A stretch of DNA of 64,000 bases from Rhodosorus marinus CCMP1338 (lineage: Eukaryota > Plantae > Rhodophyta), in contig JAMWBK010000007.1 in NCBI GenBank assembly GCA_029953675.1, forward strand, positions 1,674,001 to 1,738,000. Direction: 5' to 3'. Positions 11,458-51,655 of this stretch are shown piece by piece. The first letter of the stretch is position 1. Each line of letters begins with the position of its first letter. Under the pieces are notes generated by a model. It was not told the origin of the DNA. It made no database searches and was given only the letters and a program-made list of their open reading frames with translations. Made by a program: the position numbers and the translations under genes.

Positions 11458-14400
11458 ATGAATATAGACTCGGAGATTGCGGCGCTGAGGGCCAAGGCTG
11501 AGGAGCTGAAGAAGAACGAAGACTCAATTGCAGCATTCTCCGGAACCTCGAGGGTGGCGCAGAGTATTGTGACTTCTCTGAGCTCCCAGTTGAAACGGCT
11601 GGAATACAAGCCCCAGTATTCTGTCCGTTTCTATGAGCATGCGAATTTCTCCGGCAAGGTCTGGGCCTTTACTATGGGCGAAGCAATATCGAACATGAGA
11701 AGCGGGCCAAAAGCACTTGCAGCAAGCTCGCTCAAAATCAGCCCCGGCGCTGAGGTCCTGTGCTTCACAAGACCGGGCTTCAGAGGCACGCCAATAAGAT
11801 GGAGCAAGGATGTTTCCTGGTTCGGAGCCCATAACGACAAAATACTGTCTGCAAAACTCGACTACAGCGGTGCCAGGAGAGCTGAGATTATCGCTCTCAA
11901 TGTTAAACTCGCGAACGCGCGTTTTGAGTTGGATCAGCTTGAAAGGATCAACACAGAGAACATACAAGCAACCGCGAACCAGAGCCTCCAAGAAGTGCTC
12001 GCGGAGATCCAACGACTGGAGGCGTACAAGAGGTCTGACGCATTCGAACATAGCTCTATGGAGTTGGAGGTTACTGCCGAAGCTGGAGCTCAGGTAGGAA
12101 GTGTTTCAGTGGGAGGTGTTAAACTTAACCTAGTTAACACAGAGTCGGATGAAGTTGCGGCAAAGTGGAGTATCGTCGATGCACTACACTTTGTGGCTAT
12201 CGAAGCTATGAGCGGGTCTATACTGCAGGTGGTTATCGTTAAGGAGACGGAAGTAGAGTCTCTTGGCACCGCTCTTGACGATATGATCCATGGCGAAGAT
12301 CTATCCGATGGGACTCTGGTTACTGTTTTCAGTCGTGGCGTCGTGAAGGCTTTGTATAACCAATCACGAGTACAGAGCGCTCTCCAGGCAATCGGTGTCG
12401 ACACCACTTCGGAGAAAGTTGAGAGGGGTCGGGAAGATTTTGACTATTGTGCTGTTGGCTTTAAAGGAGCTGCATTGGGGCTTGCACGCGAGGTCTTCAA
12501 TGTCGGTTCTGAAGGGAAGGCAACGCTGACAATGTCCATCCCAAGAATGACTCGAGTGGAAGGAGCTCAAGTAAGCCCGCTACCCAAAGAGAATGCGATC
12601 CTCGCGGAATCGGCATCGGACGCGACGGGGAGGAGCTTCGCGGCAATCACAGTATCTGGTGTTGAACATATTGGTTGCTCGGCAAGTGCGAGGAAAACTT
12701 GCTGGCGGGGAATTAACGCTCTGAAGATCGATTCATTCTCCCAAGCTGTCACAACGGAAGTATTCGGGACTCATATGGCAGAGGATCAGTCTCAAAAACT
12801 CCTGGAATGGTTAGCGACCTTAAAGCAGGGCGACATTTTTGCTCTTGCTGTTAACGGTGATGGCTTTAGTGCTATGTCAGAAAGTTGTATTGAAGCGCTT
12901 ACCCAGATTGGATCAAATCTCAGGGAGAAGCTTCACCGCTCCTACGCTCTAGTTGGCTTCCGAAACTCGTCTACGGGTAGACTCACGGCATATGACGAAG
13001 CATTTGAAACAACGGACGCTTTGTCCGTTGAGAAATCGACACCTGTTGCGGCGTACCACGTAATCGAAGCGGCTCGCACTTCTTGGAAACGTGAAGTTCC
13101 ACACGGGACGACAGCTCTAGCCTTGGAAATTGCAAGCAGCCGTGAAGGAGCTCGAATCTGCTATGCGAATAAGCTCGTTGCTGCAAGTCATCCGTTGAGG
13201 TCGTTTCAGCCAGTGGAGGCGGGACTTGCAATGCTGGTCATGGACGCGGTAACCGGCAAGGTCATTGAGTTTAAACGATTTGACACCGTGCTGAATGAGG
13301 GGCTGGGACGTGTCCTATTGTCCTGGATGAAAGCCTTACCCTGGGGCAGTTTGGTTGCAGTTGTTGCACCTGGCAAGGCAGTTGCTGCCCTTGCCAGACC
13401 CGGGTTGGCCGCACTGGGGCTTATCGGTGGGATAGTTAGCCGTGCCCCGCCAGAACAGAGGCCGTTGAAGGGGTACGCCATGGTGGGTCGCCGTGGAGCT
13501 CCAGTTGGCTCAGCATTTGAAACTTGGGGACATGAAGCCCTCCAACAAATCTCTCTGGCAGTGCCTTTGAACGATTCTACGAAAATGAATAGTTCCAGCG
13601 CGTTATTGATGCTCCAGGCGGCGAATTCTTCCAAACATTCTGAAGGATTTCAGACCATTATCCTGAAGTCACCTAACCCGTGGACCCCACCGCACGTGAT
13701 TGTCGGTCCTGAGGAAAATGGGCCAATTGAGGGAATGCAAAATGATATCGTCCTGGCCAATATGGATGCGAGCGACTTGCACGTACGCGGCGTGTCTTCA
13801 ATTAACGGGTCGACAAGTGGTGAGGCACAGCGAGCGCGCATTGAATGGGAGAAATCAAAGTTCGGAAATGACGCTTTGATTGTTGAGTTATACACGAGCA
13901 AGACAGCAAAGCACCAATCAAGGGGAGACGGAGTCAAGATCAAGTTTTCCAAAGCGGGTACGACTGAGTTTGAGAGTTCCCTGAGTTCCATCGAGCCACC
14001 CTATACTGAGAACGGCATCAGCGTCGTGTTGCCATTGGAGCAAAGTCGTGTCTCGGATGCAGAGCCACCAGGAGATTTGCAACCAAGGAGCATAGTAGCT
14101 GAATCTGTTGGTGATTACAATGGAATTGGAGCCGTAAGGATTACGCTCGGCGAAGAGGTTCTAGCCTCCTCTACGTCAGACCAGGACGTTGTTGGGTTCC
14201 TGGCTATGGCGCGCTTGACGACAACCAACGGTGAACTGGAGCATGAGCAACTAATTATTGACGTCAACACAGAGACAACCGCGTCGGATTTGACAGCAAA
14301 ACTGGAGAAGATTTCACGCTCATCACGGAGAGGTGACGTTATTGCTCTTAGCTTCCGAGGGGTTGATCCGATCCTGCTGCAAACGAACATCTTCGAGATG

Positions 14401-17289
14401 CTGGGTGCAATGGAGTATCAGGCGGCCACGGAGAAAAGTTCTTACTGCATCGTAGGTGTGCTGGAAGAGTTGAAACCTATGCGAAGCCTCCCACCAGCGA
14501 AAGAATCTCTTCGCGCGGATGCATGTCACCAACAGGATTGTGAACTCGCTCTTGCTCGAGCACAGCTCTGGTACAGGCCACATACGGACGAGAGGACAGT
14601 GATTCAAGTCGTGGCTGGAGTTGACAAGCTGGCAGTCAGAGTAGGTACCCTTATCGTCCTGGGAAGTCTCGAGGGAGCTGCTGTCAAGCATCCCCGTGAG
14701 GGATGGAATGTGGTCGTTCTGGAGAAACACTCTTCTACGGTAACCGGAATCCATCGCTTTGGTTTTGAGGACCAAATGAAACTCGAGAGAAGACTGAAAA
14801 TGATTCGTGCGACAGAACTAGTGGTTCTTGCATTTCGAGCACCAGCATTTGGGCTCATTATACCCAAAGAATCGCTCATCGGCGCTATAACAAGGCTGGG
14901 TGCAGAGGAGTTTGCAAAACTGCCCACACTTTCGGGCCCATTTTCGTACGGCTTCATAGGTGGACCTGGGGAAGCAGGCGAGGAGCGTATTGCAACGGGC
15001 GAAGATCACGAGGTCAGGTTGGCCAAGAGCTACGTCCAGCTGCCGGCTAATCTTGGCGGCGAACCGCCCGCGATGGACGAGGAAGGTGCTAAGAACGAGC
15101 CGTTTTCCAATGAGACGCTATCCCTTGAGGAGGTTGTTGTATCCAAAGAAGCGGTGTTTGGCCCACGATACGATGACAACGGTGAATCTCAACTCGCCCA
15201 GAGTTGGGGTTTCCGATGTATTGTTGCCTGCGATCGACCGCTCGTGCTCTCTCTCACCGCAGAAGACTGGTGCTCGGTCTATGTCGATGGCGGATGGCAT
15301 TCCGTGGGACCGGGACGCCTGGTCTCTGTGAAGACAACAGTTGGGGATGAGATTCACATGTCCGTTCCATGCAACCGCCTGGAAATCACCTGCCCGGCGC
15401 TCATCTTAGCAAGCGGATCATCCAGGATGCGTCTGGACCTCACAGAAATCTCAGGGCTTAAAAGGTTTGTTGGTGAAGCGCTTGTAAACTCACTTATAGA
15501 TGAGCGCAAAAACGGTCGTGCTTTTTCGGCTAAGGATGAATGGAGCGAAAACTCGCTTCAGAGCATACAAAGCGCCTTAAGAGCAATACAAGCGAAGCAC
15601 CACCAAGAAAACAAGTGGAGTGTCCTGGAAGCGTCATTTGTGCTGCATGTTGAGAACCCGACATCAGCGCTGTACGCGGGACTCTCCAGTTTTCATCGCT
15701 TGAGGCGAGGTAGAGAGCCGACTGAGCCTCACCGTTTTCGCACAAAGATATACAGAGAAGGGAGCACTGCTGCTGTGCGTGAGGAAAGCGAGGGTCGGGG
15801 GCGCTGGCAGTATGGGTACCGGTTGCCGCTTGATGTAGAGTCACCGCGGTTGCTGAAAGCAATTGAAGATTTGCGGAGCAGGCGCACACTGCTTCGAACT
15901 CTCGCCGTTGAGGCTCGATCTGGTAGCGCGAGAATCTTCCTTGAGGTGGTTCATGAGGGAGTTAAGGACACACTCGAGGTTCAATTAGGTCGCGTGGATA
16001 GCTCGGAGAAACGGGTCTTCTTGGGGCACCTAATGGATATCCTATTGGGCTTACTAAACTGTCCGTTCAAGGAGTATTCAACGATAATCGCCAAGAAGCT
16101 TGGAGGTTTTGTTGGATACGACGCCAGGAGTCTCCTCTGGAGACAACGACTGCTGCTGTCAAACTTGTGGGCCAGATCGCGGAAGACATTGAACAAACTT
16201 GATGCAGCCCCTGATTCATCTGTTGGGCACTTGAGTGATCTCGGTAAAACCACCATTGACCACACCGGTCTGATTGCAGAGCGAGCGCTGCTGACGTGGA
16301 CCGTAGTGGTGCAGGACCAGCCAGAGATCTTTGTAAACGTGGCTCCAAATGTTGTTTGGATGGATGAACTGTTGCTGCAGGGAATCTGTTCTGCGGAACG
16401 GCCTAGTAATCTCGCTACGAGCCCATGGAGCTCTATGGGTATGATCTTGGATTCTACTGAAATGAAAGCTCTCGACGTCGAAGATCTACAGTCGCTGCAA
16501 CTCGTCGCCATGAAGATGTCGACTGTGAATAGGAATACTGACAACGCGGGGGAGGCAGTTTCGAATCTGCGTGGCACTGAATCGATTCCGAACTGGACCA
16601 GAAAATGGTTCTTGGGCAATGACGTCGAAGAGCCTGGGCCTTTGGACGCTGTTTCGTCGCCCTTGACGGAGCCCCGAGGACAATATAGAAAGGAAATCGC
16701 TCGCGATGTGCGTGAGCTGCTCAACCTTGCATTGACCCAATCGGTAACGCTTCCAGGATTCACGGAGATCTACAAGCTCTTCTTCCGAGCCGGTTCCCAC
16801 ACGATCCTCGATGGGTTCATGATGGCAAGTGCCATCCTGATGAATTGCGTCGAGAAAACTGATACACTCTTTGACTCTGACGAGAGCGCTCTCCCACGGA
16901 GCCGTTCAGTTTTTGAGAAGCTCTCGGGATTGGACGAAGAGGGCGAAGTGGAATCACAAGATCCGGTGGTCATGCCAGACGCTGAGTTGGAAACAATCAT
17001 ACCAAGTATGCTCAGGCCAGAACGTCTGCTGCAGGCGAGCGGAATTACCAGGAGGGTGGCAAGCCGATTGCACCAGCATTTGGAGCGTACAATGTGCTCA
17101 CTCGCAACTCTGGATCAATGGAACGAGTGGAGTGTCGCGCTGGAGTTCGCCGCAATCTTGGAGATTATCTTACTAGCGATGGAAGGTGGTGGTGAGCTTG
17201 TACATGCAAGGTGTTTGCTCCTTTTACCAATTGTTTGGACATTGACAAGGAAAGCGGAAGAGCTTGGAAAGACCATTGAAGGCTCATGA
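11458..17289 (+). CDS. 1943-aa multidomain protein: coiled coil, beta/gamma-crystallin domain, coiled coil, ~5-6 ILEI/PANDER-like repeats, ~700-aa uncharacterised C-terminus
   Basis: Two Greek-key motifs (VRFYEHANFSG..ASSLKI; FTRPGFRG..NDKILSAKL, aa ~54-134) are flanked by heptad-rich helices. Repeated units of the form G(I/L/W)xxxxxD..F(D/G)T..LxxWxxxL.xG.(V/I)xxxV..AL..IG..(S/G)Y(A/G)xVG resemble ILEI/GG domains. Single long ORF, ATG start, no signal peptide. Confidence 0.75.
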   Translation: MNIDSEIAALRAKAEELKKNEDSIAAFSGTSRVAQSIVTSLSSQLKRLEYKPQYSVRFYEHANFSGKVWAFTMGEAISNMRSGPKALAASSLKISPGAEVLCFTRPGFRGTPIRWSKDVSWFGAHNDKILSAKLDYSGARRAEIIALNVKLANARFELDQLERINTENIQATANQSLQEVLAEIQRLEAYKRSDAFEHSSMELEVTAEAGAQVGSVSVGGVKLNLVNTESDEVAAKWSIVDALHFVAIEAMSGSILQVVIVKETEVESLGTALDDMIHGEDLSDGTLVTVFSRGVVKALYNQSRVQSALQAIGVDTTSEKVERGREDFDYCAVGFKGAALGLAREVFNVGSEGKATLTMSIPRMTRVEGAQVSPLPKENAILAESASDATGRSFAAITVSGVEHIGCSASARKTCWRGINALKIDSFSQAVTTEVFGTHMAEDQSQKLLEWLATLKQGDIFALAVNGDGFSAMSESCIEALTQIGSNLREKLHRSYALVGFRNSSTGRLTAYDEAFETTDALSVEKSTPVAAYHVIEAARTSWKREVPHGTTALALEIASSREGARICYANKLVAASHPLRSFQPVEAGLAMLVMDAVTGKVIEFKRFDTVLNEGLGRVLLSWMKALPWGSLVAVVAPGKAVAALARPGLAALGLIGGIVSRAPPEQRPLKGYAMVGRRGAPVGSAFETWGHEALQQISLAVPLNDSTKMNSSSALLMLQAANSSKHSEGFQTIILKSPNPWTPPHVIVGPEENGPIEGMQNDIVLANMDASDLHVRGVSSINGSTSGEAQRARIEWEKSKFGNDALIVELYTSKTAKHQSRGDGVKIKFSKAGTTEFESSLSSIEPPYTENGISVVLPLEQSRVSDAEPPGDLQPRSIVAESVGDYNGIGAVRITLGEEVLASSTSDQDVVGFLAMARLTTTNGELEHEQLIIDVNTETTASDLTAKLEKISRSSRRGDVIALSFRGVDPILLQTNIFEMLGAMEYQAATEKSSYCIVGVLEELKPMRSLPPAKESLRADACHQQDCELALARAQLWYRPHTDERTVIQVVAGVDKLAVRVGTLIVLGSLEGAAVKHPREGWNVVVLEKHSSTVTGIHRFGFEDQMKLERRLKMIRATELVVLAFRAPAFGLIIPKESLIGAITRLGAEEFAKLPTLSGPFSYGFIGGPGEAGEERIATGEDHEVRLAKSYVQLPANLGGEPPAMDEEGAKNEPFSNETLSLEEVVVSKEAVFGPRYDDNGESQLAQSWGFRCIVACDRPLVLSLTAEDWCSVYVDGGWHSVGPGRLVSVKTTVGDEIHMSVPCNRLEITCPALILASGSSRMRLDLTEISGLKRFVGEALVNSLIDERKNGRAFSAKDEWSENSLQSIQSALRAIQAKHHQENKWSVLEASFVLHVENPTSALYAGLSSFHRLRRGREPTEPHRFRTKIYREGSTAAVREESEGRGRWQYGYRLPLDVESPRLLKAIEDLRSRRTLLRTLAVEARSGSARIFLEVVHEGVKDTLEVQLGRVDSSEKRVFLGHLMDILLGLLNCPFKEYSTIIAKKLGGFVGYDARSLLWRQRLLLSNLWARSRKTLNKLDAAPDSSVGHLSDLGKTTIDHTGLIAERALLTWTVVVQDQPEIFVNVAPNVVWMDELLLQGICSAERPSNLATSPWSSMGMILDSTEMKALDVEDLQSLQLVAMKMSTVNRNTDNAGEAVSNLRGTESIPNWTRKWFLGNDVEEPGPLDAVSSPLTEPRGQYRKEIARDVRELLNLALTQSVTLPGFTEIYKLFFRAGSHTILDGFMMASAILMNCVEKTDTLFDSDESALPRSRSVFEKLSGLDEEGEVESQDPVVMPDAELETIIPSMLRPERLLQASGITRRVASRLHQHLERTMCSLATLDQWNEWSVALEFAAILEIILLAMEGGGELVHARCLLLLPIVWTLTRKAEELGKTIEGS

Positions 17290-18443
17290 GGCCTCTGCGA
17301 AGCCATAAGAAAATGAACGAGTACGTCATGAGCATAACGAATCGAAGGGTAATCATCGGCAGTACCTAAGAGGTAGTTCGCCCTGTCTCTGGCTGGAGCA
17401 GACAATGATGTAGAAATCCAGATCCTCCTACGGACATTGATTCACAAGCGATTCGGCACAATGCCACTCGTGGCGCTGGAACTGGGGAACTGGTTGACTG
17501 GTGGAAGCAGTCCCTCGCAACTACTACTACTCGAGCGCATTCAATTCGCTCGACTCCTTGTTCTGTCAGTTTGTGCAGACACTGGAACTCCCGCCTTAGA
17601 TCAATCGATGGACTAAAGCCATTCTTCCACGAGCTGAATGCGGTTGTCAAGTACTAGGCAGGATTGTCCAACCAATTAAACCATCGATATCTCTCACCGA
17701 TTTCAATATCCAAGACCCACTCAGTCCAGAGCCGGGGGGGGGGGGGGGACGCGGGAGGGGGCCTTAGAACTCAGCAAACTTTCAATTGCACCAAAAAAAC
17801 CCTTTTCGTCCGCATCCACGCGACAGAACTCATCCAGTCGCGGCCACCACCACGATACAGGGCTTGATTCTCCTACCAAAGACAACTATGTAGTGGTTCT
17901 TAAGCTAAACGAGAGGATCGATACATTAGGTCCTAGAGAGCCCTGACCTTTTTATAGGATCTCTGATACTTCGATGGAATCGAAACTCTTCCTCGCTTTA
18001 GTGTGGCTGGTGCTTGAACATTTTGTCTTTGCCTGGGGGAGTCGGCATAGTTTTCGGCTTGTGTGTAGGGTGAGGTTGTGTTTACCTCGGCGGTAGCAAA
18101 TAGTTCCGAAGGCGACTTTTTTTATATTCGAAGTGACGTTGATTTGCGAGGTAGCTAACAAAGTCAGATCTTCTCACGAAAGCGAGTCTGGGATTTGTTC
18201 TGGGTGGGGGGGGAGTCAGCGACGAACCGCGTTTCATCGTGGGAACATACTGACTCAGCGCTTCCATGTTTGAATATCCTTGCTCGTCGCAGGGAGAGGT
18301 GCAGTTGAAACGAGTAGAGACAGAGTCTGAAGTTACAAGGGGTGAGATGGTCAGCCCTGACTTGTTTTCTAGCATTTTTGGAAACGGATAAGCTTCTGTT
18401 TTGGGGGTGGGAACTTGAAGGTTGAGTATCAGCTTGTATCCAT

Positions 18444-19592
18444 TTGGGCTTGTTTGGAGCTACAAGGGTAGCGATGGATACGTTTGAGTTGAACAGGGCC
18501 AGTGCGGTGCAGGGCGATCTTAGCAGTTGCCAACTTGGGGTCGGTTTCGACGTCCAGAAAATGCTGGTTCGATCACGTACGATCGATGACAATACGGTTG
18601 AGCTTGTAGACGATCCAGTCTCGGACAGGGACTCGATGGTATTTAAAATGGAGAGGTTGGACCAGTCAAAACTTGAAGAGGATCGTGTTAAAGTCCGTGG
18701 AGTATTTCGAGCGTCGTTCGGGCCTCTCGAAGCATCTGTGGAAGGCGGGTTCGAGCATGCCACTGAAAGTTCCAAAGCGAAAAGCTTTCTACGGTTTACG
18801 ATTGGAATAGTCCGACTTGTTCGCGGTCTAAAGAGCTTCTCCATCGGGCTAAGAGACGAGGTGGAGTTCGATGATGTGGACTTTCTGGACAGCTATGGAA
18901 CCGGTTACGTGTCCAGTATAAGCTATGGGGGTTACATGGAGGCCATCATGGAAGTCAATGAGAATACATCAAAAAGCCTCAATGTCTTTGACATCAAGGG
19001 CAAAGTAACGTCCGGGATTGTCACAGTGGAGGCCTCCATTAAGGCGGAAATCGAACTAGCATCTTCGGGCCGTGAAGTTGAGATCACAATTTCTCAGAGG
19101 GGTGGCAACGCGTGGAGTCTTGAACTGAGTCCGACGGTCGCTTCTTTCGCCAAGGTTGTGGGCAAGTTCGCTGAACAAGTCCGCTCCGCGAGAGTGGAAG
19201 ACCTCGTACCCGTCGCGATTACGATCAGCAAATACGAGAGCGCACCGCGCATCGCGCAGCTCGCTCAGCTCAGAAGGTTTTCGAGCTCTTTGCCAGTTGA
19301 TATCGTTTCGGAGCAAGTCTTGCTAATGGAGAACGTTCTTGCCATCCTTCGTGGTTACGGCGCGGCGCAAGTCTACATAGCTTCACAACTCCACGTACAA
19401 AAGGCGGTTCTTAACCCGCCAGCGTTCAGGAACCTCCTCGCCGCGTACCGGGAACTTTACAAAGGAAAATCCCGAGTCACGAAGGAGCTCGTCAGGGCCT
19501 CGCTAGATAGTGACCGTCTGAGCCGTGAACTCGTCAAGTCCCTGCCGCATGCATTTGAGGTGATGAGTTTATACGACTTCGGAGGATCTTGA
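18444..19592 (+). CDS. MACPF-like pore-forming protein, paralogue 3 (likely ATG start at 18474; ~372 aa): MACPF domain plus short helical tail only
   Basis: LGVGFD; YGTGYVSSISYGG signature; LVPVAITISKY; TMH-like segments align by eye with the other three paralogues. Confidence 0.8.
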   Translation: MGLFGATRVAMDTFELNRASAVQGDLSSCQLGVGFDVQKMLVRSRTIDDNTVELVDDPVSDRDSMVFKMERLDQSKLEEDRVKVRGVFRASFGPLEASVEGGFEHATESSKAKSFLRFTIGIVRLVRGLKSFSIGLRDEVEFDDVDFLDSYGTGYVSSISYGGYMEAIMEVNENTSKSLNVFDIKGKVTSGIVTVEASIKAEIELASSGREVEITISQRGGNAWSLELSPTVASFAKVVGKFAEQVRSARVEDLVPVAITISKYESAPRIAQLAQLRRFSSSLPVDIVSEQVLLMENVLAILRGYGAAQVYIASQLHVQKAVLNPPAFRNLLAAYRELYKGKSRVTKELVRASLDSDRLSRELVKSLPHAFEVMSLYDFGGS

Positions 19593-20852: not shown

Positions 20853-23800
20853 TTAAAAATCGCTCAGCACGAGGCGACACTTGCCGGCTTCGCTGACGTC
20901 GTCTCGCTGAGCTAATCGCATAAACATCTGGTTCAGAATTCCTTCCCTGCTTTTCTTCGCGTTCCATAGCCGAAGTTCCGAGAAATTTCCGCGAGCACGT
21001 TCTACAACTGCTCCTCCATCCAAAACCATTCCGCCGACGGAGATCTGTGGTTTCCCCGCAACGTCCAGTCTCCTCCTATTAACGGTCTTCTGCTTAGCCC
21101 CATCCACGAAGATCTCAATTTTGTTTGCACCGTCATTGGAACCCCATCTCAGTTTTGAGTCGTAGAGAACCGCGATATGCTTAGGGAAGCGACTTCTCAC
21201 AAAGTTCATAACCGGCGGGGCACCTTGAATTCTCTTACGCAAGAGCAGGAGTTCCTGTGCTTCAACAACACCGGAGTTTCGATGTCCGCTGTGGTCGAAG
21301 ATTTCAAGAGGTTTCATCTTTCGAAAGCGGCCCGGAACGATCTTCATTGCTGTGGTGCCTTCCGCTTGGGCAAGCATGTCAGGCCCAGCATCCGCTCGGT
21401 TTCTCAGGTTTGCGTTCGTGAAATAGTAGTATCCTACCAATCCCCGCGAAGACCTGCTGATCCTCGTGTTCATGTCTGCGACAACATCCGCAGCGGTCCT
21501 CGTCCGGTTGTAAACCCTGAAGTCGTCTACCATGAGACACGCACGGCGATTGGATCCCAACGAATCCACGCCCATGAAAAAATGGTCGTTGCCATCCGCA
21601 AGCCAACCATGATCAATCGTAAACTCGCTTTGCACGTTTTGCATTTCGACCTCAAGCCCGTTCACAATCACACCAAACCAGCCGTTGCTCAGCCTCGACT
21701 GGTAGCTCAGATGGTACCATCCTCGGGCTTTCAAAGGCACAGTCGCTGCTCTGTCTACGGAATAGAAGCCTAAGTACGGTTTTCCATTCCTCACAACGCA
21801 ATGCAGCTTCCTGCGTGTTTCTATAACTCCAGGTTTCGTAAAGCAAAGGAACCTATCTCCCGGAAAACCCCCCTGATCATCCGCTCCTTCGTAGTACACC
21901 CATGCTTCGATCGAGAAGTCACCCTTTTCCAACCCATAGTGCTTGACCGTACCAAGCGATAGCCTCTGCTTAGGAATATCAGAAAGAGCAGCTGCAGAGG
22001 TCTCAAAGTCTTCGGCATCCTCATTCGCGTAAAAGGGCCCTGGAGCGGGAACCATCAGTTCGCCAGTCTTCGCATACCCGGTGGCCATCAATTCTGTCTT
22101 GACTGGGTTCTGCGCTCTGTTCTGATAGTTTCTATTTTTGAAGCAGTAGTAACCTCGAAGTCCGTTCGCCGAAGCGAGAATTCGAGAATCCCCATCGCGG
22201 AGAATCTCTTGCGCAGTCCTCAGACGGTTGAAGATCCTTACTTCATCGATCATCTCCACAACACCTGTATGGCCGTGCCAGGTCGGGTCCGGCCCAATGA
22301 ACAACCCGTCGGACTTTTCAAACTTCCCTTTAACAACGCCCTCTGCCTCCATCCCGATCTCAATACCGTTCAGAATCACGTTGGCAAATCCTTCGCTTAG
22401 ATTGCCTTGAAAGCTCACATGATACCAACGACCTGCATGCAGCTTGACGAACTTAGATGTACATTGAAAAGACCCGTTACCAATCCTCGGCTTTCCCCGT
22501 TCAAGGCTGCACTGGAGTTGTCTACCAGGGATGTTGGGACCTCCAGTGGTAAAGATGAACTGACTCTCATCTGTAGCCCGGGGAAAGATCCACGCCTCTA
22601 GCGAGAATCCTCCACTCTCGATTCCGTAATCCGATACTTTACCGATGGCGAGGGATTCCCCGTTCGCAAAGAACTTGTGAGCTGATTGTTCGAACTCAAC
22701 TGCGTTTACGTTTGGCACGCGTTTCTGCTGATCCAGCACTCCTAGCTCTTCGAATGTGTAGTACGCCTTTAATCCTGCCTCTCGTGGATGGCACCGTGTC
22801 TGGAAATCCCTTGTGACGACGCTAGGTTCGCGTGCGACATCGAACATTCGGACTTCCATGATCTCTACTTCGTTCTGGGGATCGTCTTCACCAGCTCCAA
22901 TCACCAGCTGGAGATTCTTGGTCAACATATTCATTTGCTCGTCAGGGAAGAGCTCGAAAACCACAACCCCGTTGCGGAGGGCCCGCAAAACAACTTTTGC
23001 GCTCTCGCCTTTTGTTTCACGAATTTCTCTTTGGAAGCATAGATGATGCCACATGTCCAGTTTGAAAATGGGGCCGCTCTCCCCTATGCCATCAACGACG
23101 AGCGTTCGTTCGGCACTCAAGTTTACGGTTAGCACCGGCGATTTAGATGTCTTGCTCATCAGTGAAAGCAACTTTATCCCGTTGAAGTCTGTTCCAGAAA
23201 CAGTCACCCGGAACCACATTTCCAAAGTGAATTCACGGGACTCATTGTCTATATTGTCCATGTCCGGGAGTACAAGCTGTCCAGTTACTAAGCTGAGGCC
23301 CGTCAGAGCTCCAACCTTTCTCGGCTCGGGCTGGTTGAGCGCGACAATGCTGTCGGTCGATACTGGATCTGTGAAACCGCGACGGCTCAAGTCAACTAGA
23401 CGACCGTCTTCCATGCAACAGAAGTAAGCCATCAAGTTCGGCTCGAATCCAGTGAGGCGGATATGGTTGTCTCTGTTGATGTCTCTGTACTGTCGAGTGC
23501 GATTGAATACTCGAATGTCATCGATCCACACATCAGCCTTTGGGGCTCCGAAACGCAAGTTAGCGCGGCCAGCGAGCGGTCCCTCATACTTGAATTTCCT
23601 CCGTTCAGCTCCACTCTCGTCCTCTCCAAGGCCATCGACTAGTATGCTTGCTGACCACTCTCGCTCCACGTTACTCGTGTCAAAGTCAACCGGATCGAAG
23701 AGGAAAGCAAAGTGAGTCCATTGCCCTGTTTGAACCTCTTCCGCCGCGATGATCATCGTCGTTTCTCCTCCGAGCGATACGAAAGGAAATAGTCCTTCCG

Positions 23801-26800
23801 TGAAACCAATTTGAAGCGAGCCACCGTCCACAGGCTCAAGGGTTTCCAGAAGCAGAATGCGTTCTTCTGCTTCTTCTACGGCTTCAATTTTTGCCCAGAA
23901 CTCAATTGAGATTCCTGGACTGGAGCCATGAGAGTCAAGGATGCCTAGTTCCTCCAGCGTTCCAAGGTAGACCTGTCCTGTACCAAGCGCATCCAGTGGA
24001 AAACCGAAACGAAGCGTGTCCGACTTCCTGCTTCCGATCGGAAAGCATTCATGCGTGCCAACGGAATCCGACCGGGAAACTAGAGCTGGCGCCGTCCGAA
24101 ACCGTTTCCGTACTGGCCTCGTGAGCTCGATCTCAGCCCCTAAGCGACCAGTTACCCCGCTGTGGTCAACAAACTTCCGCGCAACTTGATTGTAACGATA
24201 GCAAGCAGTCAGTTCCCCCGCTGGAAGTCGCTCCGTGTTGATTCGATTATTCATATCTCGCAGGATCCACGCATCAGACCTCGCAACTCGAAACAACCGA
24301 ACCTCCTCAATCCATCCAACGAATGGTGCAAGGCTCGAAATACCCCCCCCTAGAATCCAACGCATTGGGCTCCCATCGTGCATTGTCTCCCATTCCCAGG
24401 CAGCGATACCACTGTCAGCAATCACGCCGTTCACTAATACATCTTTTCGTTTTGACTTCCCGCTATAGCGGAACGCTAAATGATTCCATGTCTCCGGAAC
24501 TAAGTCTGCCGCTAGGCTGTTCTTGTCCTTCAAGAAGTTGAAACGCACTTGCTTGCTTACCGGGTCAAGAGATATGCGAAGATCCTTTCCTTCCTCAGTG
24601 AGTTCAGGCGACTGAAGCATTAAGGCCACCTCTCTTTCTTCATCATTCACCTTCCACCACAACCACAACTCGATGGTGAAGGCTGCAGTGATCGAAAGCT
24701 TCTCCAAGTCGGGCATCGATACGGCATCCTCGTTGATCCCACGAAACGGACATGCTGAGGAAAGAGGCAATGTTGGCCGGCATATACTGGCCTCCACTTT
24801 CTGGCAAGCGAATGGGGACGATAGCTGGGGAGAAATCGAAAGACTGTTCCTGGGAATCTCCGTCTGAGAATCCAGAACTTCACAGTTAATTGCAAGACTT
24901 GAGAAACAAGTTACTTCCATTGCGCTAATATCCATGCTCACAGCCAATGCCAGGTTATCTGGAGGCATTTCGGTGTCTAGGCGGTTGCTCATGTACGATC
25001 GAACCATGTCCCTCGACAGCGCTTCAGAGAACCACAGCAGCTCATCGACCCAGAACGGTCCGCTTGCGCCTTCGACGGGGAATACCAGATTCAGATCAAA
25101 GGATTCGTTCTCTCTGCTGGGAGTTCCATCACCTTGCTCAACCACCTTGTAATCCTCAGCAACACCATCAACGCAGAGCTCCAGACTTTTCCGAGACTGT
25201 CTCCTGATCAAGGCGATATGGTACCATTTTCCAGCTTCTGCCTGTCTACGACTAACGAGGGCTACCTCCTCAGCAGTATCCGTTTGCTGGATTGAGAACA
25301 CAATTTTTCCATCTCGTCTCTCCAGTTTGAATCGCGGCCCAAGATACCGCTCGTGCTCTGTAGTCAGGAGTACAGACGAAGGCGCTGCGGCTTCCTCAAA
25401 AGCCAACCACATGCCAAATGTGAAATCGCCAGAAAAATAGTCCTCCTCTCCCTTCATTGTGACTTGTAGTCGACCCGTACTTTGCGGTGCTGATGAGGAT
25501 TGAAATAGAATCGGAGCCCATCGCAGGCTTGAGCTCTTGTCGTCCCATCCATTGAAGTTCAAAATTTTCCGCTGAAAAATGCTGGCATCCACTAGTCGTT
25601 CTTTACCGTCTTGCTTTCCGATTCTGTAACACGCGACAAGACTGTCCTCCGAAGCACCATGCCTCACGTTGAAGTTTTCAGCGATCTCCTCACTCGATCG
25701 GAGTCGATTGAAGATGCGCAGCTCGTCGATTGCCCCGTCCAGTGCGGCAGTCCCCAGGAACCCCACTTGCAGACTGTTGACAGTGCTCGCTATCCAAGGT
25801 ATCCGGTCACTACTTGAGGAATCGAAGGAACTGTGCCCGACAGCTCGCGAGTACACGCCGCTAGGCGCTTCAACGCCGTTGATGAAGATCTCCCGTTTTC
25901 CCAAGTTCTTATCGAAACAAAACGCTAGATGATTCCACTCGCGCTTTATCAGCTTATGTGGGCAAACAATATCTACCCCAACCTCGGGCATGGTGAAATG
26001 AGGTTTTGCAGCAGCAGCCTCTTCGTCCGCCTCGAGCCACAACCCCATCAACAGCTTCCCTTCTCCTTTTGAGGTAACCGCGATTAAGGGAATGACACCA
26101 CTCGATTTCTCATCCTTTTTCTCCGGGTCAATTCCGTATCCATTCACTCCGGTAGCATCGTACCGAAAAACAAAGTACACCCACAGCTCAATTGTGAAGC
26201 TTCCACTTCCAAGGCCAAGTTCTTGTGGGTGATGGGCGAAGGTTCTACGCGGTGATGAGTCCGAAAAGACGAAGGCTGGGCGCTGCTGCGAGTTGACCAA
26301 GCTGAGTTTCATCAATTCAGCATTACCTACGGAGCTGAAAATTCAGTTCTAATGTTTGAGGGCTTTCTGGGTGATCATAATCATCCGACATGTGACTACA
26401 TGCCAAATCTCACCTTCATTTCCAGTAGCTCCGGCCGCTAGGATGGTATGTCGGACTTCTTCCTGATGGGGTATTGGTGAGGCTCGCACCTCTACTGTTA
26501 GTTGTTTCTGTGGTAGGTCGTCGCTGTCGTCCACATCCAATTGAAGCGAATCATGAAGATTCGCCATGTATTGGGGCGCTGTTGCGGAAGGATCACGTTC
26601 AGAGAACAACCAGCGGCTGCCACTACCTGAATGAAGAACAGCCGCGATGGAGACATCACTCACTGGTGGTTCTAGCAGGCCTGCGCATCTACTCGAATCA
26701 GTGGCTTGAACAAGGAGGCTAGGTACTTCGTGACCTTTTTCTGTCGATACAACGACCCCCGAGACCTCCTGGCGGCAGTGCTTAGGCGCATCATATCCAT

Positions 26801-29045
26801 GCCATGTTACGCTCATCCCTCTCAGTTCGTTGGTCACTTTTTCTTCACCATCGATGTCCCACAGTTTTGGAGCTGTTATTTCGAGCTTCAAACTGCCAGT
26901 TTCTATTGAATCCGTAAGCTCTAATTCCAGATCGCCGACGGTTAATGGTAACCCCGGGGGAAGCGAAACGGTTGAAGGTTCCTTGAGAACAAGACACCAG
27001 CTTACTGATTTGCTGCCGAGCGAGACCCGTTCACTGAAGAACGCTTCCATCACTGTCCCAAGGCTGAACGATGAACTTTCTCCGTTCAAGACACGAGCGA
27101 GCAACTGAGGACTCCTAGGAACATATCTCCAGACCTCCAACACCTGAAATACCTTATTCTCAAGTGTTACCGTGCAGTACGGACTAATCAAAATCGGGGA
27201 CGTCGCCTTCTTCGTAAACGTTGCCTCTCTGGATAGTTTGATGGTCGTAGCTCCCTCTCCGGTCCTAGTACGACGAGAGAGGAAGTACATCCAACCGCTT
27301 TCTTCCTTCCATGGTTTGACCTCGTTGACGAGTCTTAGGCGTTGTATTGCGGGCGACGAGTTCTTGTCAAGTGTGGCTGTCAACAACCCCCCCCCAAAAC
27401 CCTCAAGTCTCAACTTGACTTTCTGAACGAGTTCCAATGCATGCAGAGGTTGCGTCGCTGCAGCATGACAACCAAGCACACTAGCACTCATTGTTCGTCC
27501 TCTTGAATCAAATTTGACCACGATCGGGCTCATGGCTGGGGAGTCAAGCCAGTGCCTAGTTATCAGGCTGTTCAGTTTCACGAGTCTAGCACTGTAGGCA
27601 TCGATCAGCTTCGAAATAGACTTGATTTCGGTATCGTCAGTGTAGGCACTCAGCAAAGCACCACTAGCAAGTGACTGTCTTTTCGTATCCAGACCAGCCA
27701 TTTCTGCCTGCAGCAGGTACATTTCAGCCCTGTAGGCAGCAGAGCGTCCCGGGTCAGCGACTGCGCTTCGCCTGCCATCTTCGCCCTCGCCTTGGATGAT
27801 CCCGTGTGGGGTATTTTGAACTGTATCTTGCCAGTTAGCATTCACATAGTCCGACTCCTGGATACCCAAACCATTGCTCATCATTTTCGCAGTCGAGATG
27901 GTTCCATTCACCTCCGCAATTGAGCCATCGCGAGAATCGGCGTCGAAATCGAGAACTGCAACGAAGCGCTCCGGTCCTCTGAAAACGTCGAACACCACAA
28001 GCACTCGCTCCAGGCCGAGGCCTGAGGACAACTCCGCATCGATCCGCAGCCCGGACGTTGTCTGCTTGAGCTTAGGGTCCGTGATTGGTAGGGTGTCCAC
28101 GCTCGGTCTGTAGGTCAGGGCTTCGAGTTCCGAGCCCGGGAAGAGTCCTCTAAACATCACCGCACACTCAGTCCAAACTGGGGTGCTATCAGAATCGACA
28201 GTTTTCATCCCCGTTTGCTCTACTGGGAAGCTGAAGTATTGCACGCTCTCACCGGTGGATATGAACAAGTGGAGCTGCGATTTCAACGGACGCAAAGCGG
28301 AGGGGTGATCAGGGGGGCCTTCGCCGTGAAATGCGGATGTTCCCGCGGCGCTGAACACTGTTGCCGGTGGAATCATTCTCATTGCGACAGTTTTCGGTTT
28401 AGAGTTCGGGACGGTTCGGTCCGACACCGGAATCAGAGTTGTCCCGTCCAACGCGTACGTGTCGACGAGTAGATCGCAAGATATCACAGGTGCGATTGTA
28501 TTCGGAGCCGTCCCTTCCCTGGGTCGCTGCACCAGTGTTTTATCCGCCACATATAGATTCGACTCGCTTTCACCGTCCACGCCCGTCCGGACCACGTAGA
28601 TGAACATTCCAATAGAAACAACATCGAAGGAACCAGATCCGAAACGAGCCGTTGTTTCCATAGCTGACCTTTCGTTTGCAGATCTATTCGAAGCCTTTGG
28701 AAGCATAAACTGTTCCCTTGTGCCATCCCCGCTCACTGTTTCAATGTTTTCTGGATAGTCAAGTTCTTTTGATGCTGCTTCGAGCTGCGAACCTCCTGCT
28801 CCTGACAATAGCGCGTAACTGAGTACCTGTGGTCTTTCTAGTTTGAAGACAATCAATTTTCCACCATGGCGCAAAAATCTAACGTCCTTTGTACTCTGGC
28901 TTCCATCAAGATTCAGGTTTGTTCGAGCTCCCTCGGCTACGACCGCATCAGCGCGTGCAAAAGTATCACCATCCACTCTGAGGCCCTCGCTAATCCCATC
29001 GTCCTCCCGGAGTCTTGTCTCATTCGCACTAATCGAGCTCTCCAT
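20853..29045 (-). CDS. Giant LamG/concanavalin-A-like repeat protein, probably one gene (exons 29045-26414 and 26326-20853; ~2701 aa)
   Basis: The 1820-aa ORF contains seven repeats of F(T/S)xExW..W.H(L/I/V/F)xF..(I/V)(D/E)(E/D)xR(I/L)FN..R plus a partial eighth. The 898-aa ORF (26349..29045) is in the same frame, separated only by TAG-AAC-TGA, and both stops fall inside a phase-compatible GT-AG segment. Confidence is ~0.9 for the LamG repeats and ~0.65 for the join. Confidence 0.75.
26327..26413 (-). other. Predicted 87-nt spliceosomal intron joining the two ORFs
   Basis: GAA G|GTGAGA...AGCTCCGTAG|GT AAT, phase 1 at both ends. Its length and CGTAG acceptor match the kinase intron (..CCTCCGTAG) and the glycosyltransferase intron (..CCTCGTAG). 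Confidence 0.65.
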
Positions 29046-51037: not shown

Positions 51038-51655
51038 CTAAGCGCGGCGAAGTACTCGCGCCTCCAACATCAAAGCGGCATTCATGCGCCACAGCAGGAA
51101 ACTTAAGCGGGTAAACAACGATTGAAGACGGTCAGGGCGTTCGCGGAACAACTCCCGAAGCCAGCGAGAACCAACAGAGTCCATGAACCCAAAGCACTCA
51201 ATGATCAGGGGTACCAAGCGAAGTGCTAGTGCCGAAGCACGAACACCAGGGGAAGACAAAGCCCCCGCGTATTTGATCTCTTTGCGGCGTCTCATGCCGG
51301 CGGCGGCAGATCCACGGCGCTCCCCCGCAGCCGGGAGATAACGACTAGCTTGAGGGTTAGGAACAGCAAGATCAACGTATGTGGTACGGCGGCTGTCGTC
51401 ACAGGTGATCACCAGGTCGGCTACACGGCGTTCATCATTTTGAAAGTCCGCGACGGGTAAAGGTTTCTCACGTTCGATTTCCAGACCGGCTTGCCGGACT
51501 ATAGGCCGAAGTTCCCGGTATAACAGGTTCAAGATCCGTGTATGGCGGCGGGTTCGAGCACCATTCACCGCCGGGCAACTAGCGAGCAGGTGGGCGCCAA
51601 AATCTGCGTTGTCTTCAGTCTGAGAGCAGAGAGGGCACGACGAATTTCTTATCAA
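51038..51655 (-). mobile_element. 5'-truncated CRE/RLE non-LTR copy with intact CCHC and endonuclease frame
   Basis: CPLC..GAHLLASC..RTRRH; RVADLVI..YVDLAVPNP; KEIKY; LVPLIIECFG; LSFLLWRMNA. Confidence 0.9.

What the first reader, a model, noticed from the sequence alone, without database searches (positions are those of the whole stretch)
11458..17289. Unusual architecture: a crystallin domain inserted in a coiled-coil hairpin, followed by 5-6 ILEI/PANDER repeats
Seen: helix (aa 1-50), two Greek keys (nt ~11617-11859), helix (aa ~140-192), then ILEI-like units at roughly aa 200-350, 380-520, 555-695, 880-1010 and 1045-1185 (perhaps a degenerate one at 720-850), and ~700 aa I cannot assign. 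No signal peptide or clear TM. Established: ILEI domains usually occur once or twice in secreted or Golgi proteins (FAM3, POMGnT1 stem, CEMIP), and microbial crystallins bind Ca2+. Inference: a multivalent glycan sensor or scaffold, with a possibly Ca2+-sensitive tip, that recruits the MACPFs. The C-terminus may hide an effector domain.
Basis: partly seen in the sequence, partly recalled or inferred. Interest (0 to 1): 0.7.

Follow-up and report, generated by a model that had tools for sequence, protein, structure and literature searches.

The report
Red-algal giant crystallin plus ILEI-repeat protein
A real, expressed 1943-residue gene of the red alga Rhodosorus marinus joins a small crystallin-type domain to five very divergent copies of a sugar-binding-type (ILEI) domain and about 750 residues that resemble nothing known; the combination is new, but what the protein does is still unknown.

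Summary
The window is nuclear DNA of Rhodosorus marinus. ORF 11458-17289 (+) is a real, intron-less gene. A full-length transcript orthologue (1937 aa, 75% identity) has the same Met start with an in-frame stop upstream, and dN/dS is 0.37.

- A beta-gamma-crystallin domain (aa 52-136) sits between two predicted helices. It has both Greek-key signatures and every significant PDB hit is a crystallin, but it scores 23.8 bits against a Pfam cut-off of 25.
- Five ILEI/GG units follow. Pfam detects three (101.7 bits in all); two more are supported only by leave-one-out profiles and a modelled fold.
- The suspected sixth unit (aa 713-868) behaves like the controls.
- There is no signal peptide or transmembrane segment.
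- The last ~750 aa match nothing in Pfam or PDB. aa 744-1943 also match nothing among 1.84 billion representative proteins.

- Neither Ca2+ motif is canonical.
- Only unit 2 keeps the R/D/R sugar-binding triad, so "multivalent glycan sensor" is not supported.
- Four MACPF-like genes without signal peptides do lie nearby, but nothing links them to this protein.

Verdict: a new domain architecture built from known domains, restricted to this genus as far as searched. Function is inferred only. Interest is moderate.

The parts
11458..17289 (+). Complete single-exon CDS, 1943 aa plus stop (P0001), Rhodosorus marinus contig JAMWBK010000007.1
   Evidence: Collinear with transcript contig L003 over window 11371-17683 without gaps larger than 5 codons.
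11371..11457 (+). 5' UTR stretch conserved with the orthologue's transcript
   Evidence: The window ORF has an in-frame stop 34 codons upstream of the ATG. The orthologue has one 13 codons upstream.
11458..11610 (+). N-terminal helix, aa 1-51 (no signal peptide)
   Evidence: AlphaFold2 helices at 3-26 and 32-49. Heptad pattern is marginal. 47% identity and dN/dS 0.89 against the orthologue.
11611..11865 (+). Single beta-gamma-crystallin domain, aa 52-136, with two Greek keys and non-canonical Ca2+ motifs
   Evidence: AlphaFold2 did not fold it (pLDDT 32-39).
11866..12054 (+). Long helix, aa 137-199
   Evidence: AlphaFold2 helix 133-192, pLDDT 63-69. Weak coiled-coil-type Pfam hits in the orthologue.
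12055..12543 (+). ILEI/GG-like unit U1, aa 200-362 (divergent, no Pfam hit)
   Evidence: Leave-one-out HMM 21.2 bits, 0 of 200 shuffles. hhalign P 2.5e-3. AlphaFold2 pLDDT 57-87. Foldseek hits TMEM2 at E 4.3e-4 and phage ILEI proteins at 8e-7 to 5e-3.
12589..13062 (+). ILEI/GG unit U2, aa 378-535. Best-conserved unit and the only one with the R417/D468/R494 sugar-binding-type triad.
   Evidence: Pfam ILEI 47.2 bits. 83% identity and dN/dS 0.19. Triad mapping.
13108..13572 (+). ILEI/GG unit U3, aa 551-705
   Evidence: Pfam ILEI 33.2 bits. Leave-one-out tests.
13594..14061 (+). Unassigned module U4, aa 713-868 (strand-rich by eye only). Not ILEI by any test.
   Evidence: No Pfam hit at E<=10. 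Leave-one-out HMM equals the shuffles. hhalign probability 0.1%. Conserved in the orthologue, dN/dS 0.39.
14080..14547 (+). ILEI/GG-like unit U5, aa 875-1030 (divergent, no Pfam hit)
   Evidence: Leave-one-out HMM 13.7-19 bits, 0 of 200 shuffles. hhalign P 6.4e-5.
14587..15042 (+). ILEI/GG unit U6, aa 1044-1195
   Evidence: Pfam ILEI 23.0 bits on its own, below the cut-off of 27. hhalign P 3.6e-3, in register over 118 columns.
15043..15132 (+). Acidic linker, aa 1196-1225 (27% D+E)
15133..15432 (+). Cys-rich module, aa 1226-1325. Most conserved part of the protein; five invariant Cys (1254, 1258, 1272, 1305, 1312).
   Evidence: 88% identity, dN/dS 0.18. Cysteines. Strands appear in the AlphaFold2 secondary structure, but at pLDDT 30-46. 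No Pfam or PDB hit.
15433..17286 (+). Orphan region, aa 1326-1943, predicted helical at low confidence
   Evidence: No Pfam or PDB hit. The exhaustive search found only the orthologue. AlphaFold2 pLDDT about 30. dN/dS 0.27-0.37.
17290..17683 (+). 3' UTR, conserved with the orthologue's transcript

Best explanation
SHOWN: this is a real, transcribed, intron-less gene of Rhodosorus. It encodes a 1943-aa protein with no signal peptide and no TM segment.

Its parts, in order:
- A fast-evolving head: helix, one beta-gamma-crystallin domain, long helix.
- Five strongly diverged ILEI/GG modules (U1-U3, U5, U6), interrupted by one unrelated module (U4).
- An acidic linker.
- A highly conserved Cys-rich module.
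- About 620 residues of orphan sequence, predicted helical at low confidence.

INFERRED mechanism: a large, non-classically-secreted (most likely cytosolic) binding and scaffold protein.
- Unit U2 is the only one that keeps the R/D/R constellation used by the POMGnT1 stem and FAM3 proteins to bind GlcNAc-type sugars. It is the candidate ligand-recognition site.
- The other ILEI units have lost that site. They would act as rigid spacers or have acquired other ligands.
- A lone crystallin domain between two long helices is more likely a pairing or dimerisation head than a Ca2+ switch, because single beta-gamma domains commonly homodimerise and both Ca2+ motifs are non-canonical.
- The conserved Cys-rich module and the helical region would carry the unknown output or anchoring function.
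For: Gene reality:
- A 5.8-kb ORF with coding-type codon usage, including the N-terminus.
- The full-length orthologue P0003 comes from an MMETSP0011 transcript. It has the same start codon, an upstream in-frame stop, and is collinear over 6.3 kb.
- dN/dS is 0.33 for aa 200-1943.

Domains:
- Pfam ILEI 101.7 bits.
- A profile of the five units hits TMEM2 (1.3e-7), FAM3A (4e-4), FAM3B (3e-3) and the POMGnT1 stem (0.026) as the top PDB sequences.
- Leave-one-out tests support all five units.
- The U1 model matches the TMEM2 ectodomain and phage proteins named as ILEI.

Non-secretory character:
- The N-terminus MNIDSEIAALRAKAEELKK is acidic and helical and is conserved in the orthologue.
- No 19-residue window is free of charges and hydrophobic enough for a TM segment.
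- There are only 19 Cys in 1943 aa, and no cysteine pair is shared between the units.

One sugar site only: with PMC9802357.

Pairing of single beta-gamma domains: PMC3551895.

The head evolves about twice as fast as the rest, dN/dS 0.72.
Against: - No binding, localisation or interaction data exist.
- The R/D/R mapping rests on weak alignments (E 0.026 to POMGnT1), and loop positions are off by one residue.
- Dimerisation and helix pairing are untested, because AlphaFold2 failed on the crystallin domain.
- Proteins without signal peptides can still act outside the cell. From memory, the fungal aegerolysin/MACPF pairs do this.
- aa 1-743 were never searched exhaustively, so relatives of the head and of U1-U3 may exist.
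- The U1 model was built with the other units as its alignment, so its ILEI fold is not independent evidence.
Confidence: 0.45

Rival explanations
1. Targeting or recognition subunit of a multi-component pore-forming system. The ILEI array and crystallin head would bind a target surface and recruit the neighbouring MACPF-like proteins, none of which has a signal peptide. This would be analogous to two-component MACPF toxins that need a separate membrane-binding partner.
For: - Four paralogous MACPF-like genes lie within 20 kb on either side: 1470-3641 (+), 3966-6716 (-), 18444-19592 (+) and 30065-32314 (-).
- They share the MACPF signature F-G-D-H-F-x6-G-G, and none has a signal peptide.
- Their profile hits the MACPF-type PDB entries Aeg-L (8.4e-5) and Mpf2Ba1 (0.017).
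- The head's fast evolution, dN/dS 0.72, would fit a surface under conflict.
- From memory, untested here: beta-gamma-crystallin domains occur fused to aerolysin-type pore formers (beta-gamma-CAT, EDSP/ep37).
Against: - No domain is shared between this protein and the MACPF paralogues.
- Gene adjacency in eukaryotes is weak evidence of joint function.
- Both orthologue transcript contigs continue at the 3' end into a homologue of a gene 34 kb away (window 51293-51553), not into a MACPF.
- Only one ILEI unit keeps sugar-binding residues.
- There are no co-expression or interaction data.
Confidence: 0.12
2. Purely structural or protein-protein scaffold. The ILEI units (U2 included), U4 and the helical C-terminus would be spacer or docking modules with no carbohydrate ligand, for example a cytoskeletal or organelle-associated tether specific to this lineage.
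For: - Four of five units lack the sugar triad.
- Constraint is relaxed overall, dN/dS 0.33, and the units are only 14-23% identical to one another.
- A long predicted helical C-terminus and flanking helices suit a scaffold.
- In phage T4 an ILEI/PANDER-like domain is a structural part of the fibre 'kneecap' (bioRxiv 10.64898/2026.03.06.709160).
Against: - U2 keeps R417/D468/R494 in both orthologues and is the most constrained ILEI unit, dN/dS 0.19. That argues for a retained ligand site.
- FAM3A, FAM3C, FAMP-1 Fam3L2 and the POMGnT1 stem all bind sugars (PMC9802357).
Confidence: 0.28
3. Extracellular matrix or cell-surface polysaccharide-binding protein. It would be exported unconventionally or through an unrecognised leader and bind the sulfated mucilage of the alga, as the GG domains of CEMIP and TMEM2 accompany hyaluronan handling.
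For: - The best PDB relative of the units is the TMEM2 ectodomain.
- All characterised eukaryotic ILEI proteins are secretory or luminal. CEMIP, for example, has a secretion signal and two GG domains (PMC9704909).
Against: - The transcript-supported start codon has an upstream stop, and the N-terminus is acidic and helical in both orthologues.
- There is no TM segment, cysteine content is low and no disulfide pattern is conserved.
Confidence: 0.12
4. Annotation artefact: a pseudogene, a chance ORF or a fusion of two genes.
For: The gene has no relatives outside the genus. One transcript contig (L001) starts inside the ORF at codon 180 with unrelated 5' sequence.
Against: - A 5829-nt ORF at about 51% GC cannot arise by chance.
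- A full-length transcript exists in the relative.
- dN/dS is below 1 in every region.
- L001 is identical to the full-length contig from codon 180 onward and has no AG at the junction, so it is probably an assembly chimera.
Confidence: 0.03

Closest known systems
GG/ILEI domains of TMEM2 and CEMIP (PDB 8c6i; Pfam PF15711)
   Same: TMEM2 is the best sequence-profile hit (E 1.3e-7) and the only significant PDB fold hit for U1 (E 4.3e-4). It shares the conserved core motifs (G-x-h-h-h-h-A, h-x-x-h-G, aromatic-x-h-h-G).
   Different: TMEM2 and CEMIP are membrane-anchored or secreted. They have two GG domains flanking G8 and beta-helix modules, and they handle hyaluronan. Here there are five units, no G8 or PbH1 module, no signal peptide and no TM segment.
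FAM3A-D cytokine-like proteins and the POMGnT1 stem domain
   Same: The fold family is the same (E 4e-4 to 0.026). U2 keeps the equivalent of the GlcNAc-binding R129/D179/R207 (PMC9802357).
   Different: Those are single-domain secretory or Golgi proteins. Four of the five units here lack the triad.
C. elegans FAMP-1 (tandem Fam3L1-Fam3L2 plus a large C-terminal domain; PMC9802357)
   Same: Both have tandem FAM3/ILEI-like domains ahead of a large C-terminal region. In both, one unit has lost the sugar-binding residues while another keeps them.
   Different: FAMP-1 has two units and a C-terminus related to the POMGnT1 catalytic domain. Here there are five units, a crystallin head and an orphan C-terminus. 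No sequence relationship beyond the domain family was found.
ILEI/PANDER-like domains in phage tail fibres and receptor-binding proteins (T4 'kneecap'; BFVD models)
   Same: The U1 model matches several phage tail or receptor-binding proteins annotated as ILEI (E 8e-7 to 5e-3). As here, the domain sits in long multi-domain proteins without signal peptides.
   Different: Those are viral fibre proteins with one ILEI domain each. Nothing else is similar.
Single-domain microbial beta-gamma-crystallins (clostrillin, spherulin 3a, M-crystallin, vibrillin)
   Same: Two Greek-key motifs with the Y/F-x4-Y/F-x-G signature. The alignment to clostrillin covers the whole domain.
   Different: Those carry canonical N/D-N/D-x-x-S/T-S motifs and bind Ca2+ (PMC3551895). 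This domain has ALAASS and NDKILS, scores below the Pfam cut-off, and is embedded between two long helices at the start of a giant protein.

Membership tests
ILEI / GG domain (Pfam PF15711) | Score at or above the Pfam gathering cut-off (27 bits) | tested here: met
   Whole protein 101.7 bits. Scored singly, U2 gives 47.2 and U3 33.2 bits. U6 gives 23.0 bits, below the cut-off on its own. U1 and U5 have no hit. The orthologue scores 96.9 bits.
ILEI / GG domain (Pfam PF15711) | All five proposed units are homologous to each other and to known ILEI structures | tested here: met
   The five-unit profile hits TMEM2, FAM3A, FAM3B and POMGnT1 as the top PDB sequences. Leave-one-out HMM and hhalign are significant for U1, U2, U3, U5 and U6, while controls are not. 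Caveat: a profile of U1 and U5 alone does not reach known ILEI structures, so their membership is transitive.
ILEI / GG domain (Pfam PF15711) | Sixth unit at aa 713-868 | tested here: not met
   No Pfam hit. Leave-one-out HMM scores -20 and -1.1 bits, within the shuffles. hhalign probability 0.1%.
ILEI / GG domain (Pfam PF15711) | Beta-beta-alpha three-layer fold | tested here: inconclusive
   Only U1 was modelled (pLDDT 57-87), and its alignment consisted of the other units. Foldseek gives TMEM2 at 4.3e-4 and phage ILEI proteins down to 8e-7. This is consistent but not independent. U2-U6 were not modelled.
ILEI / GG domain (Pfam PF15711) | Sugar-binding R/D/R triad (POMGnT1 R129, D179, R207) | tested here: inconclusive
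   Present, within one residue, in U2 only (R417, D468, R494). Absent from U1, U3, U5 and U6 in both orthologues.
Beta-gamma-crystallin (Pfam PF00030) | Score at or above the Pfam gathering cut-off (25 bits) | tested here: not met
   23.8 bits for aa 1-200 alone, 19 bits in the full protein, and 15.3 bits in the orthologue.
Beta-gamma-crystallin (Pfam PF00030) | Two Greek-key signatures [YFW]-x4-[YF]-x-G plus the conserved structural Ser | tested here: met
   Y59..F64.G66 and F103..F108.G110, with S90/S91 and S131, all conserved in the orthologue. The full-length alignment to clostrillin scores E 6.3e-5 to 1.2e-4, and 15 of 16 and 17 of 18 PDB hits are crystallin-family proteins.
Beta-gamma-crystallin (Pfam PF00030) | Canonical Ca2+-binding motif N/D-N/D-x-x-S/T-S | tested here: not met
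   No match in aa 1-200. The corresponding stretches are ALAASS and NDKILS. The orthologue has FAASS and NDKILS.
Beta-gamma-crystallin (Pfam PF00030) | Greek-key beta-sandwich fold | tested here: inconclusive
   AlphaFold2 gave pLDDT 32-39 and no strands for aa 49-136. No alignment depth was available.
Antiparallel coiled-coil hairpin carrying an inserted domain | Two helices of matching length with heptad periodicity that pack against each other | tested here: inconclusive
   Helices are predicted at 3-49 (with a break at 27-31) and 133-192. The heptad test gives 32 of 1000 shuffles for helix 1 and 701 of 1000 for helix 2. Packing could not be inspected.
Two-component MACPF pore-forming systems | A dedicated partner that binds the target and recruits the MACPF component | not testable with these tools
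   Only proximity to four MACPF-like paralogues is shown. No domain is shared.

The most novel reading that the evidence does not exclude
The gene would be the recognition subunit of a red-algal, intracellularly stored pore-forming defence module. In this reading the fast-evolving crystallin head and the ILEI array recognise a grazer, pathogen or damaged-self surface. They would then license the four neighbouring MACPF paralogues that lack signal peptides, perhaps together with the adjacent 2647-aa protein with seven Laminin_G_3 domains. This would be a previously unknown kind of eukaryotic multi-component MACPF system.
Probability: 0.07. Interest if true: 0.8.

Novelty: new variant of a known kind. 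Interest (0 to 1): 0.4.

Why it matters
ILEI/GG domains are known as single or double modules in secreted, Golgi or phage-fibre proteins. This would be the first array of five, and it sits in a protein that has no secretory signal. The array is joined to a beta-gamma-crystallin domain and to about 750 residues with no detectable relative. It widens the known contexts of both domain families and adds a red-algal example.

If the single retained sugar-binding site proves functional, the protein is a natural example of one active unit among degenerate repeats. If the link to the neighbouring MACPF genes proved real, it would point to an undescribed algal pore-forming system.

As it stands, this is a well-documented orphan architecture in one genus, with no functional data.

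Tried and rejected
Searches that gave nothing:
- Word-index searches with aa 1-200 and with the U2-U3 alignment returned nothing, not even the parent protein. I treat these negatives as unreliable.
- Two metagenome scans for the N-terminus and for aa 180-420 found nothing. They did not recover the known MMETSP contigs either, so that sample is apparently not in the collection.
- Self-BLASTP found no internal repeats. The units are too diverged for pairwise detection.
- phmmer of the protein against all window ORFs and hhalign of the C-terminus against the MACPF paralogues found no shared domain.
- Pfam at E<=10 on U1, U4, U5 and both C-terminal pieces gave nothing meaningful.

Structure prediction:
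- The C-terminus model (aa 1190-1943, two-sequence alignment) has mean pLDDT 30, so no fold search was run on it.
- AlphaFold2 failed on the crystallin domain.

Ideas rejected:
- A profile of U1 and U5 alone hit only de novo TIM-barrel designs, which is spurious.
- I first took transcript contig L001, which starts at codon 180, as a sign that the N-terminal head might not belong to the gene. The full-length sibling contig L003/P0003 rules this out.
- A canonical Ca2+ site.
- A sixth ILEI unit.
- A tail-anchor TM at aa 1893-1911. The segment contains three Glu.
Full report
**Origin and gene model**

The window is nuclear DNA of the unicellular red alga Rhodosorus marinus. It lies on contig JAMWBK010000007.1 of GCA_029953675.1, and window base 1 is near record position 1,674,001.

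ORF 11458-17289 (+) encodes 1943 aa. The only relatives found anywhere are two predicted proteins from one MMETSP0011 Rhodosorus marinus transcriptome. P0002 is an N-terminally truncated call. P0003 is full length at 1937 aa.

The full-length transcript contig L003 is collinear with window 11371-17683 at 81% nucleotide identity. The only differences are five indels of at most 5 codons, so the gene has no introns. L003 starts with the same residues, MNID-EIAAL, and has an in-frame stop 13 codons upstream of its start. In the window the in-frame stop lies 34 codons upstream. The start codon is therefore supported, and so is the absence of an N-terminal signal peptide.

Codon usage marks aa 1-179 as coding in this frame, while the upstream DNA is non-coding in all frames. 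Nei-Gojobori dN/dS is 0.33 for aa 200-1943 and below 1 in every segment. This is a real, expressed gene under purifying selection.

**The head (aa 1-199)**

AlphaFold2 predicts helices at 3-26, 32-49 and 133-192 with pLDDT 55-73. It fails on aa 49-136 (pLDDT 32-39), where no alignment depth was available.

The sequence evidence for a beta-gamma-crystallin domain in that gap is consistent but only near threshold:
- Pfam Crystall gives 23.8 bits against a cut-off of 25.
- The 93-aa domain on its own matches clostrillin over its whole length at E 1.2e-4, and nearly all of the 16 PDB matches up to E 10 are beta-gamma-crystallins.
- A two-orthologue profile gives E 6.3e-5.
- Both Greek-key signatures (Y59-x4-F64-x-G66 and F103-x4-F108-x-G110) and the structural serines are present and conserved in the orthologue.

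The canonical Ca2+ motif N/D-N/D-x-x-S/T-S (PMC3551895) is absent from both keys. The sequence has ALAASS and NDKILS instead, and this is so in both orthologues. A Ca2+-sensitive tip is therefore not favoured.

I could not check whether the two helices form an antiparallel hairpin. The heptad pattern is marginal for helix 1 and absent for helix 2.

The head is the fastest-evolving part of the protein: 56% identity and dN/dS 0.72, against 77% and 0.33 for the rest.

**The ILEI array**

Pfam PF15711 scores 101.7 bits for the whole protein. Scored singly, U2 (aa 378-535) gives 47.2 bits, U3 (551-705) gives 33.2 and U6 (1044-1195) gives 23.0. U1 (200-362) and U5 (875-1030) give nothing.

All five units align with shared motifs. 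A profile of the five units from both orthologues finds TMEM2 (1.3e-7), FAM3A (4e-4), FAM3B (3e-3) and the POMGnT1 stem (0.026) as the best PDB sequences.

In leave-one-out HMM tests each unit beats all 200 shuffles. U1 scores 21.2 bits, U5 13.7-19 bits and U6 6-8 bits. Leave-one-out hhalign gives these P values, with the matches in register:

| Unit | P |
|---|---|
| U1 | 2.5e-3 |
| U2 | 5e-8 |
| U3 | 1e-5 |
| U5 | 6e-5 |
| U6 | 3.6e-3 |
| U4 and four other control regions | 0.2-0.6 |

A model of aa 1-365, built with the other units as its alignment, folds U1 at pLDDT 57-87. Its only significant PDB match is the TMEM2 ectodomain (E 4.3e-4). Its best viral matches are phage tail and receptor-binding proteins, several of which are named ILEI. 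This is supportive but not independent of the alignment that was used.

A profile of U1 and U5 alone does not reach known ILEI structures, so their membership is transitive. It is a conserved module of unknown type.

**Ligand sites**

The POMGnT1 stem binds beta-GlcNAc through R129, D179 and R207. These residues are conserved in FAM3 proteins, which also bind sugars (PMC9802357). In the HMM alignment to POMGnT1 the spacing R(+50)D(+28)R identifies the corresponding columns.

Only U2 has an equivalent constellation, R417, D468 and R494, with spacing +51 and +26. It is conserved in the orthologue. U1, U3, U5 and U6 carry D/A/G/E, no acid, and F/K/S at those positions.

U2 is also the most constrained ILEI unit, at 83% identity and dN/dS 0.19. 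So at most one canonical sugar site is retained, and 'multivalent' is not supported.

**C-terminal 750 residues**

No Pfam family appears at E<=10, and no PDB sequence matches. An exhaustive phmmer search of aa 744-1943 against 1.84 billion representative proteins found only the orthologue. The AlphaFold2 model has pLDDT 30, so it was not used for a fold search.

What can be said:
- An acidic linker at aa 1196-1225.
- A module at aa 1226-1325, predicted strand-rich only at low confidence. It is the most conserved part of the protein (88% identity, dN/dS 0.18) and holds five invariant cysteines within 60 residues.
- About 620 residues predicted helical at low confidence.

**Localisation**

The N-terminus is acidic and helical, with no hydrophobic leader. 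No window looks like a TM segment; the candidates lie inside beta-rich domains or contain Glu. The protein has 19 Cys in all, and no disulfide pattern is shared between the units. The protein is not classically secreted.

**Neighbourhood**

Four paralogous ORFs lie at 1470-3641 (+), 3966-6716 (-), 18444-19592 (+) and 30065-32314 (-). Each starts directly with an L-G-x-G-F/Y-D motif and carries F-G-D-H-F-x6-G-G, the MACPF signature. Their Pfam MACPF hits are sub-threshold, and their joint profile reaches the MACPF-type PDB entries Aeg-L (8.4e-5) and Mpf2Ba1 (0.017).

A gene call of 2647 aa with seven Laminin_G_3 domains follows at 20853-~29045 (-).

None of these shares a domain with the target. 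The rest of the window is ordinary nuclear content: an SDR, a kinase, a C2H2 zinc finger, a CHD-type helicase fragment and a reverse-transcriptase remnant. A functional link to the MACPFs remains speculation.

**Verdict**

The two exceptions are the sixth unit and the untested hairpin geometry.

The best-supported reading is a non-secreted, genus-restricted binding and scaffold protein with three features:
- one probably functional ILEI sugar site (U2), the other ILEI units being degenerate;
- a fast-evolving crystallin head that is more likely a pairing module than a Ca2+ switch;
- an orphan C-terminus that carries the unknown output.

It is a new architecture of known domains. Interest is moderate.

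Noticed in passing
window 1470-3641 (+), 3966-6716 (-), 18444-19592 (+), 30065-32314 (-): Four paralogous, strongly diverged MACPF-like genes without signal peptides. They share the N-terminal L-G-x-G-F/Y-D motif and the F-G-D-H-F-x6-G-G signature. Their profile hits PDB Aeg-L (8.4e-5) and Mpf2Ba1 (0.017). Three of them extend 350-550 aa beyond the MACPF domain with unassigned C-terminal sequence.
   Followed up: partly
window 20853-~29045 (-): A giant gene, called as 2647 aa in the public record, that joins ORFs 20853-26315 and 26349-29045. It has seven Laminin_G_3 (ConA-like lectin) domains and no obvious signal peptide.
   Followed up: partly
window 11458-12054 (aa 1-199): The helix-crystallin-helix head evolves about twice as fast as the rest of the protein (dN/dS 0.72 against 0.33; the helices are at 0.89). 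This means either relaxed constraint or diversifying selection.
   Followed up: partly
L001 1-148 against L003 1-754: Two transcript contigs from the same MMETSP assembly are identical from codon 180 of the gene onward. L001 carries an unrelated 148-nt 5' end, and the junction has no AG. It is probably an assembly chimera, though an alternative 5' end that lacks the head is not excluded.
   Followed up: partly
L001 6812-7072 and L003 7418-7678 against window 51293-51553 (-): Both transcript contigs end with 261 nt that are 79% identical to a gene 34 kb away and on the other strand in the window (ORF 51038-51655, no Pfam hit). This reflects either a synteny difference between the strains or a chimeric assembly.
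   Followed up: no
window 15133-15432 (aa 1226-1325): Five invariant Cys (1254, 1258, 1272, 1305, 1312) and two His (1282, 1300) cluster in the most conserved 100 residues of a protein that is probably cytosolic. This may be a metal-binding site.
   Followed up: no
window 5247-5427, inside ORF 3966-6716 (-): Tandem acidic repeats (PQLEAETEE, with a 108-nt higher-order period at about 92% identity) lie in the C-terminal half of one MACPF-like paralogue.
   Followed up: no
window 8821-8981: A perfect direct tandem duplication of about 80 nt in the intergenic region upstream of the target gene.
   Followed up: no
window 39103-39735 (+), within 36-40 kb: A reverse-transcriptase (RVT_1) fragment scoring 27 bits lies in a stretch of raised GC (0.545-0.571) and strong AT skew. 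It is a likely retroelement remnant.
   Followed up: no
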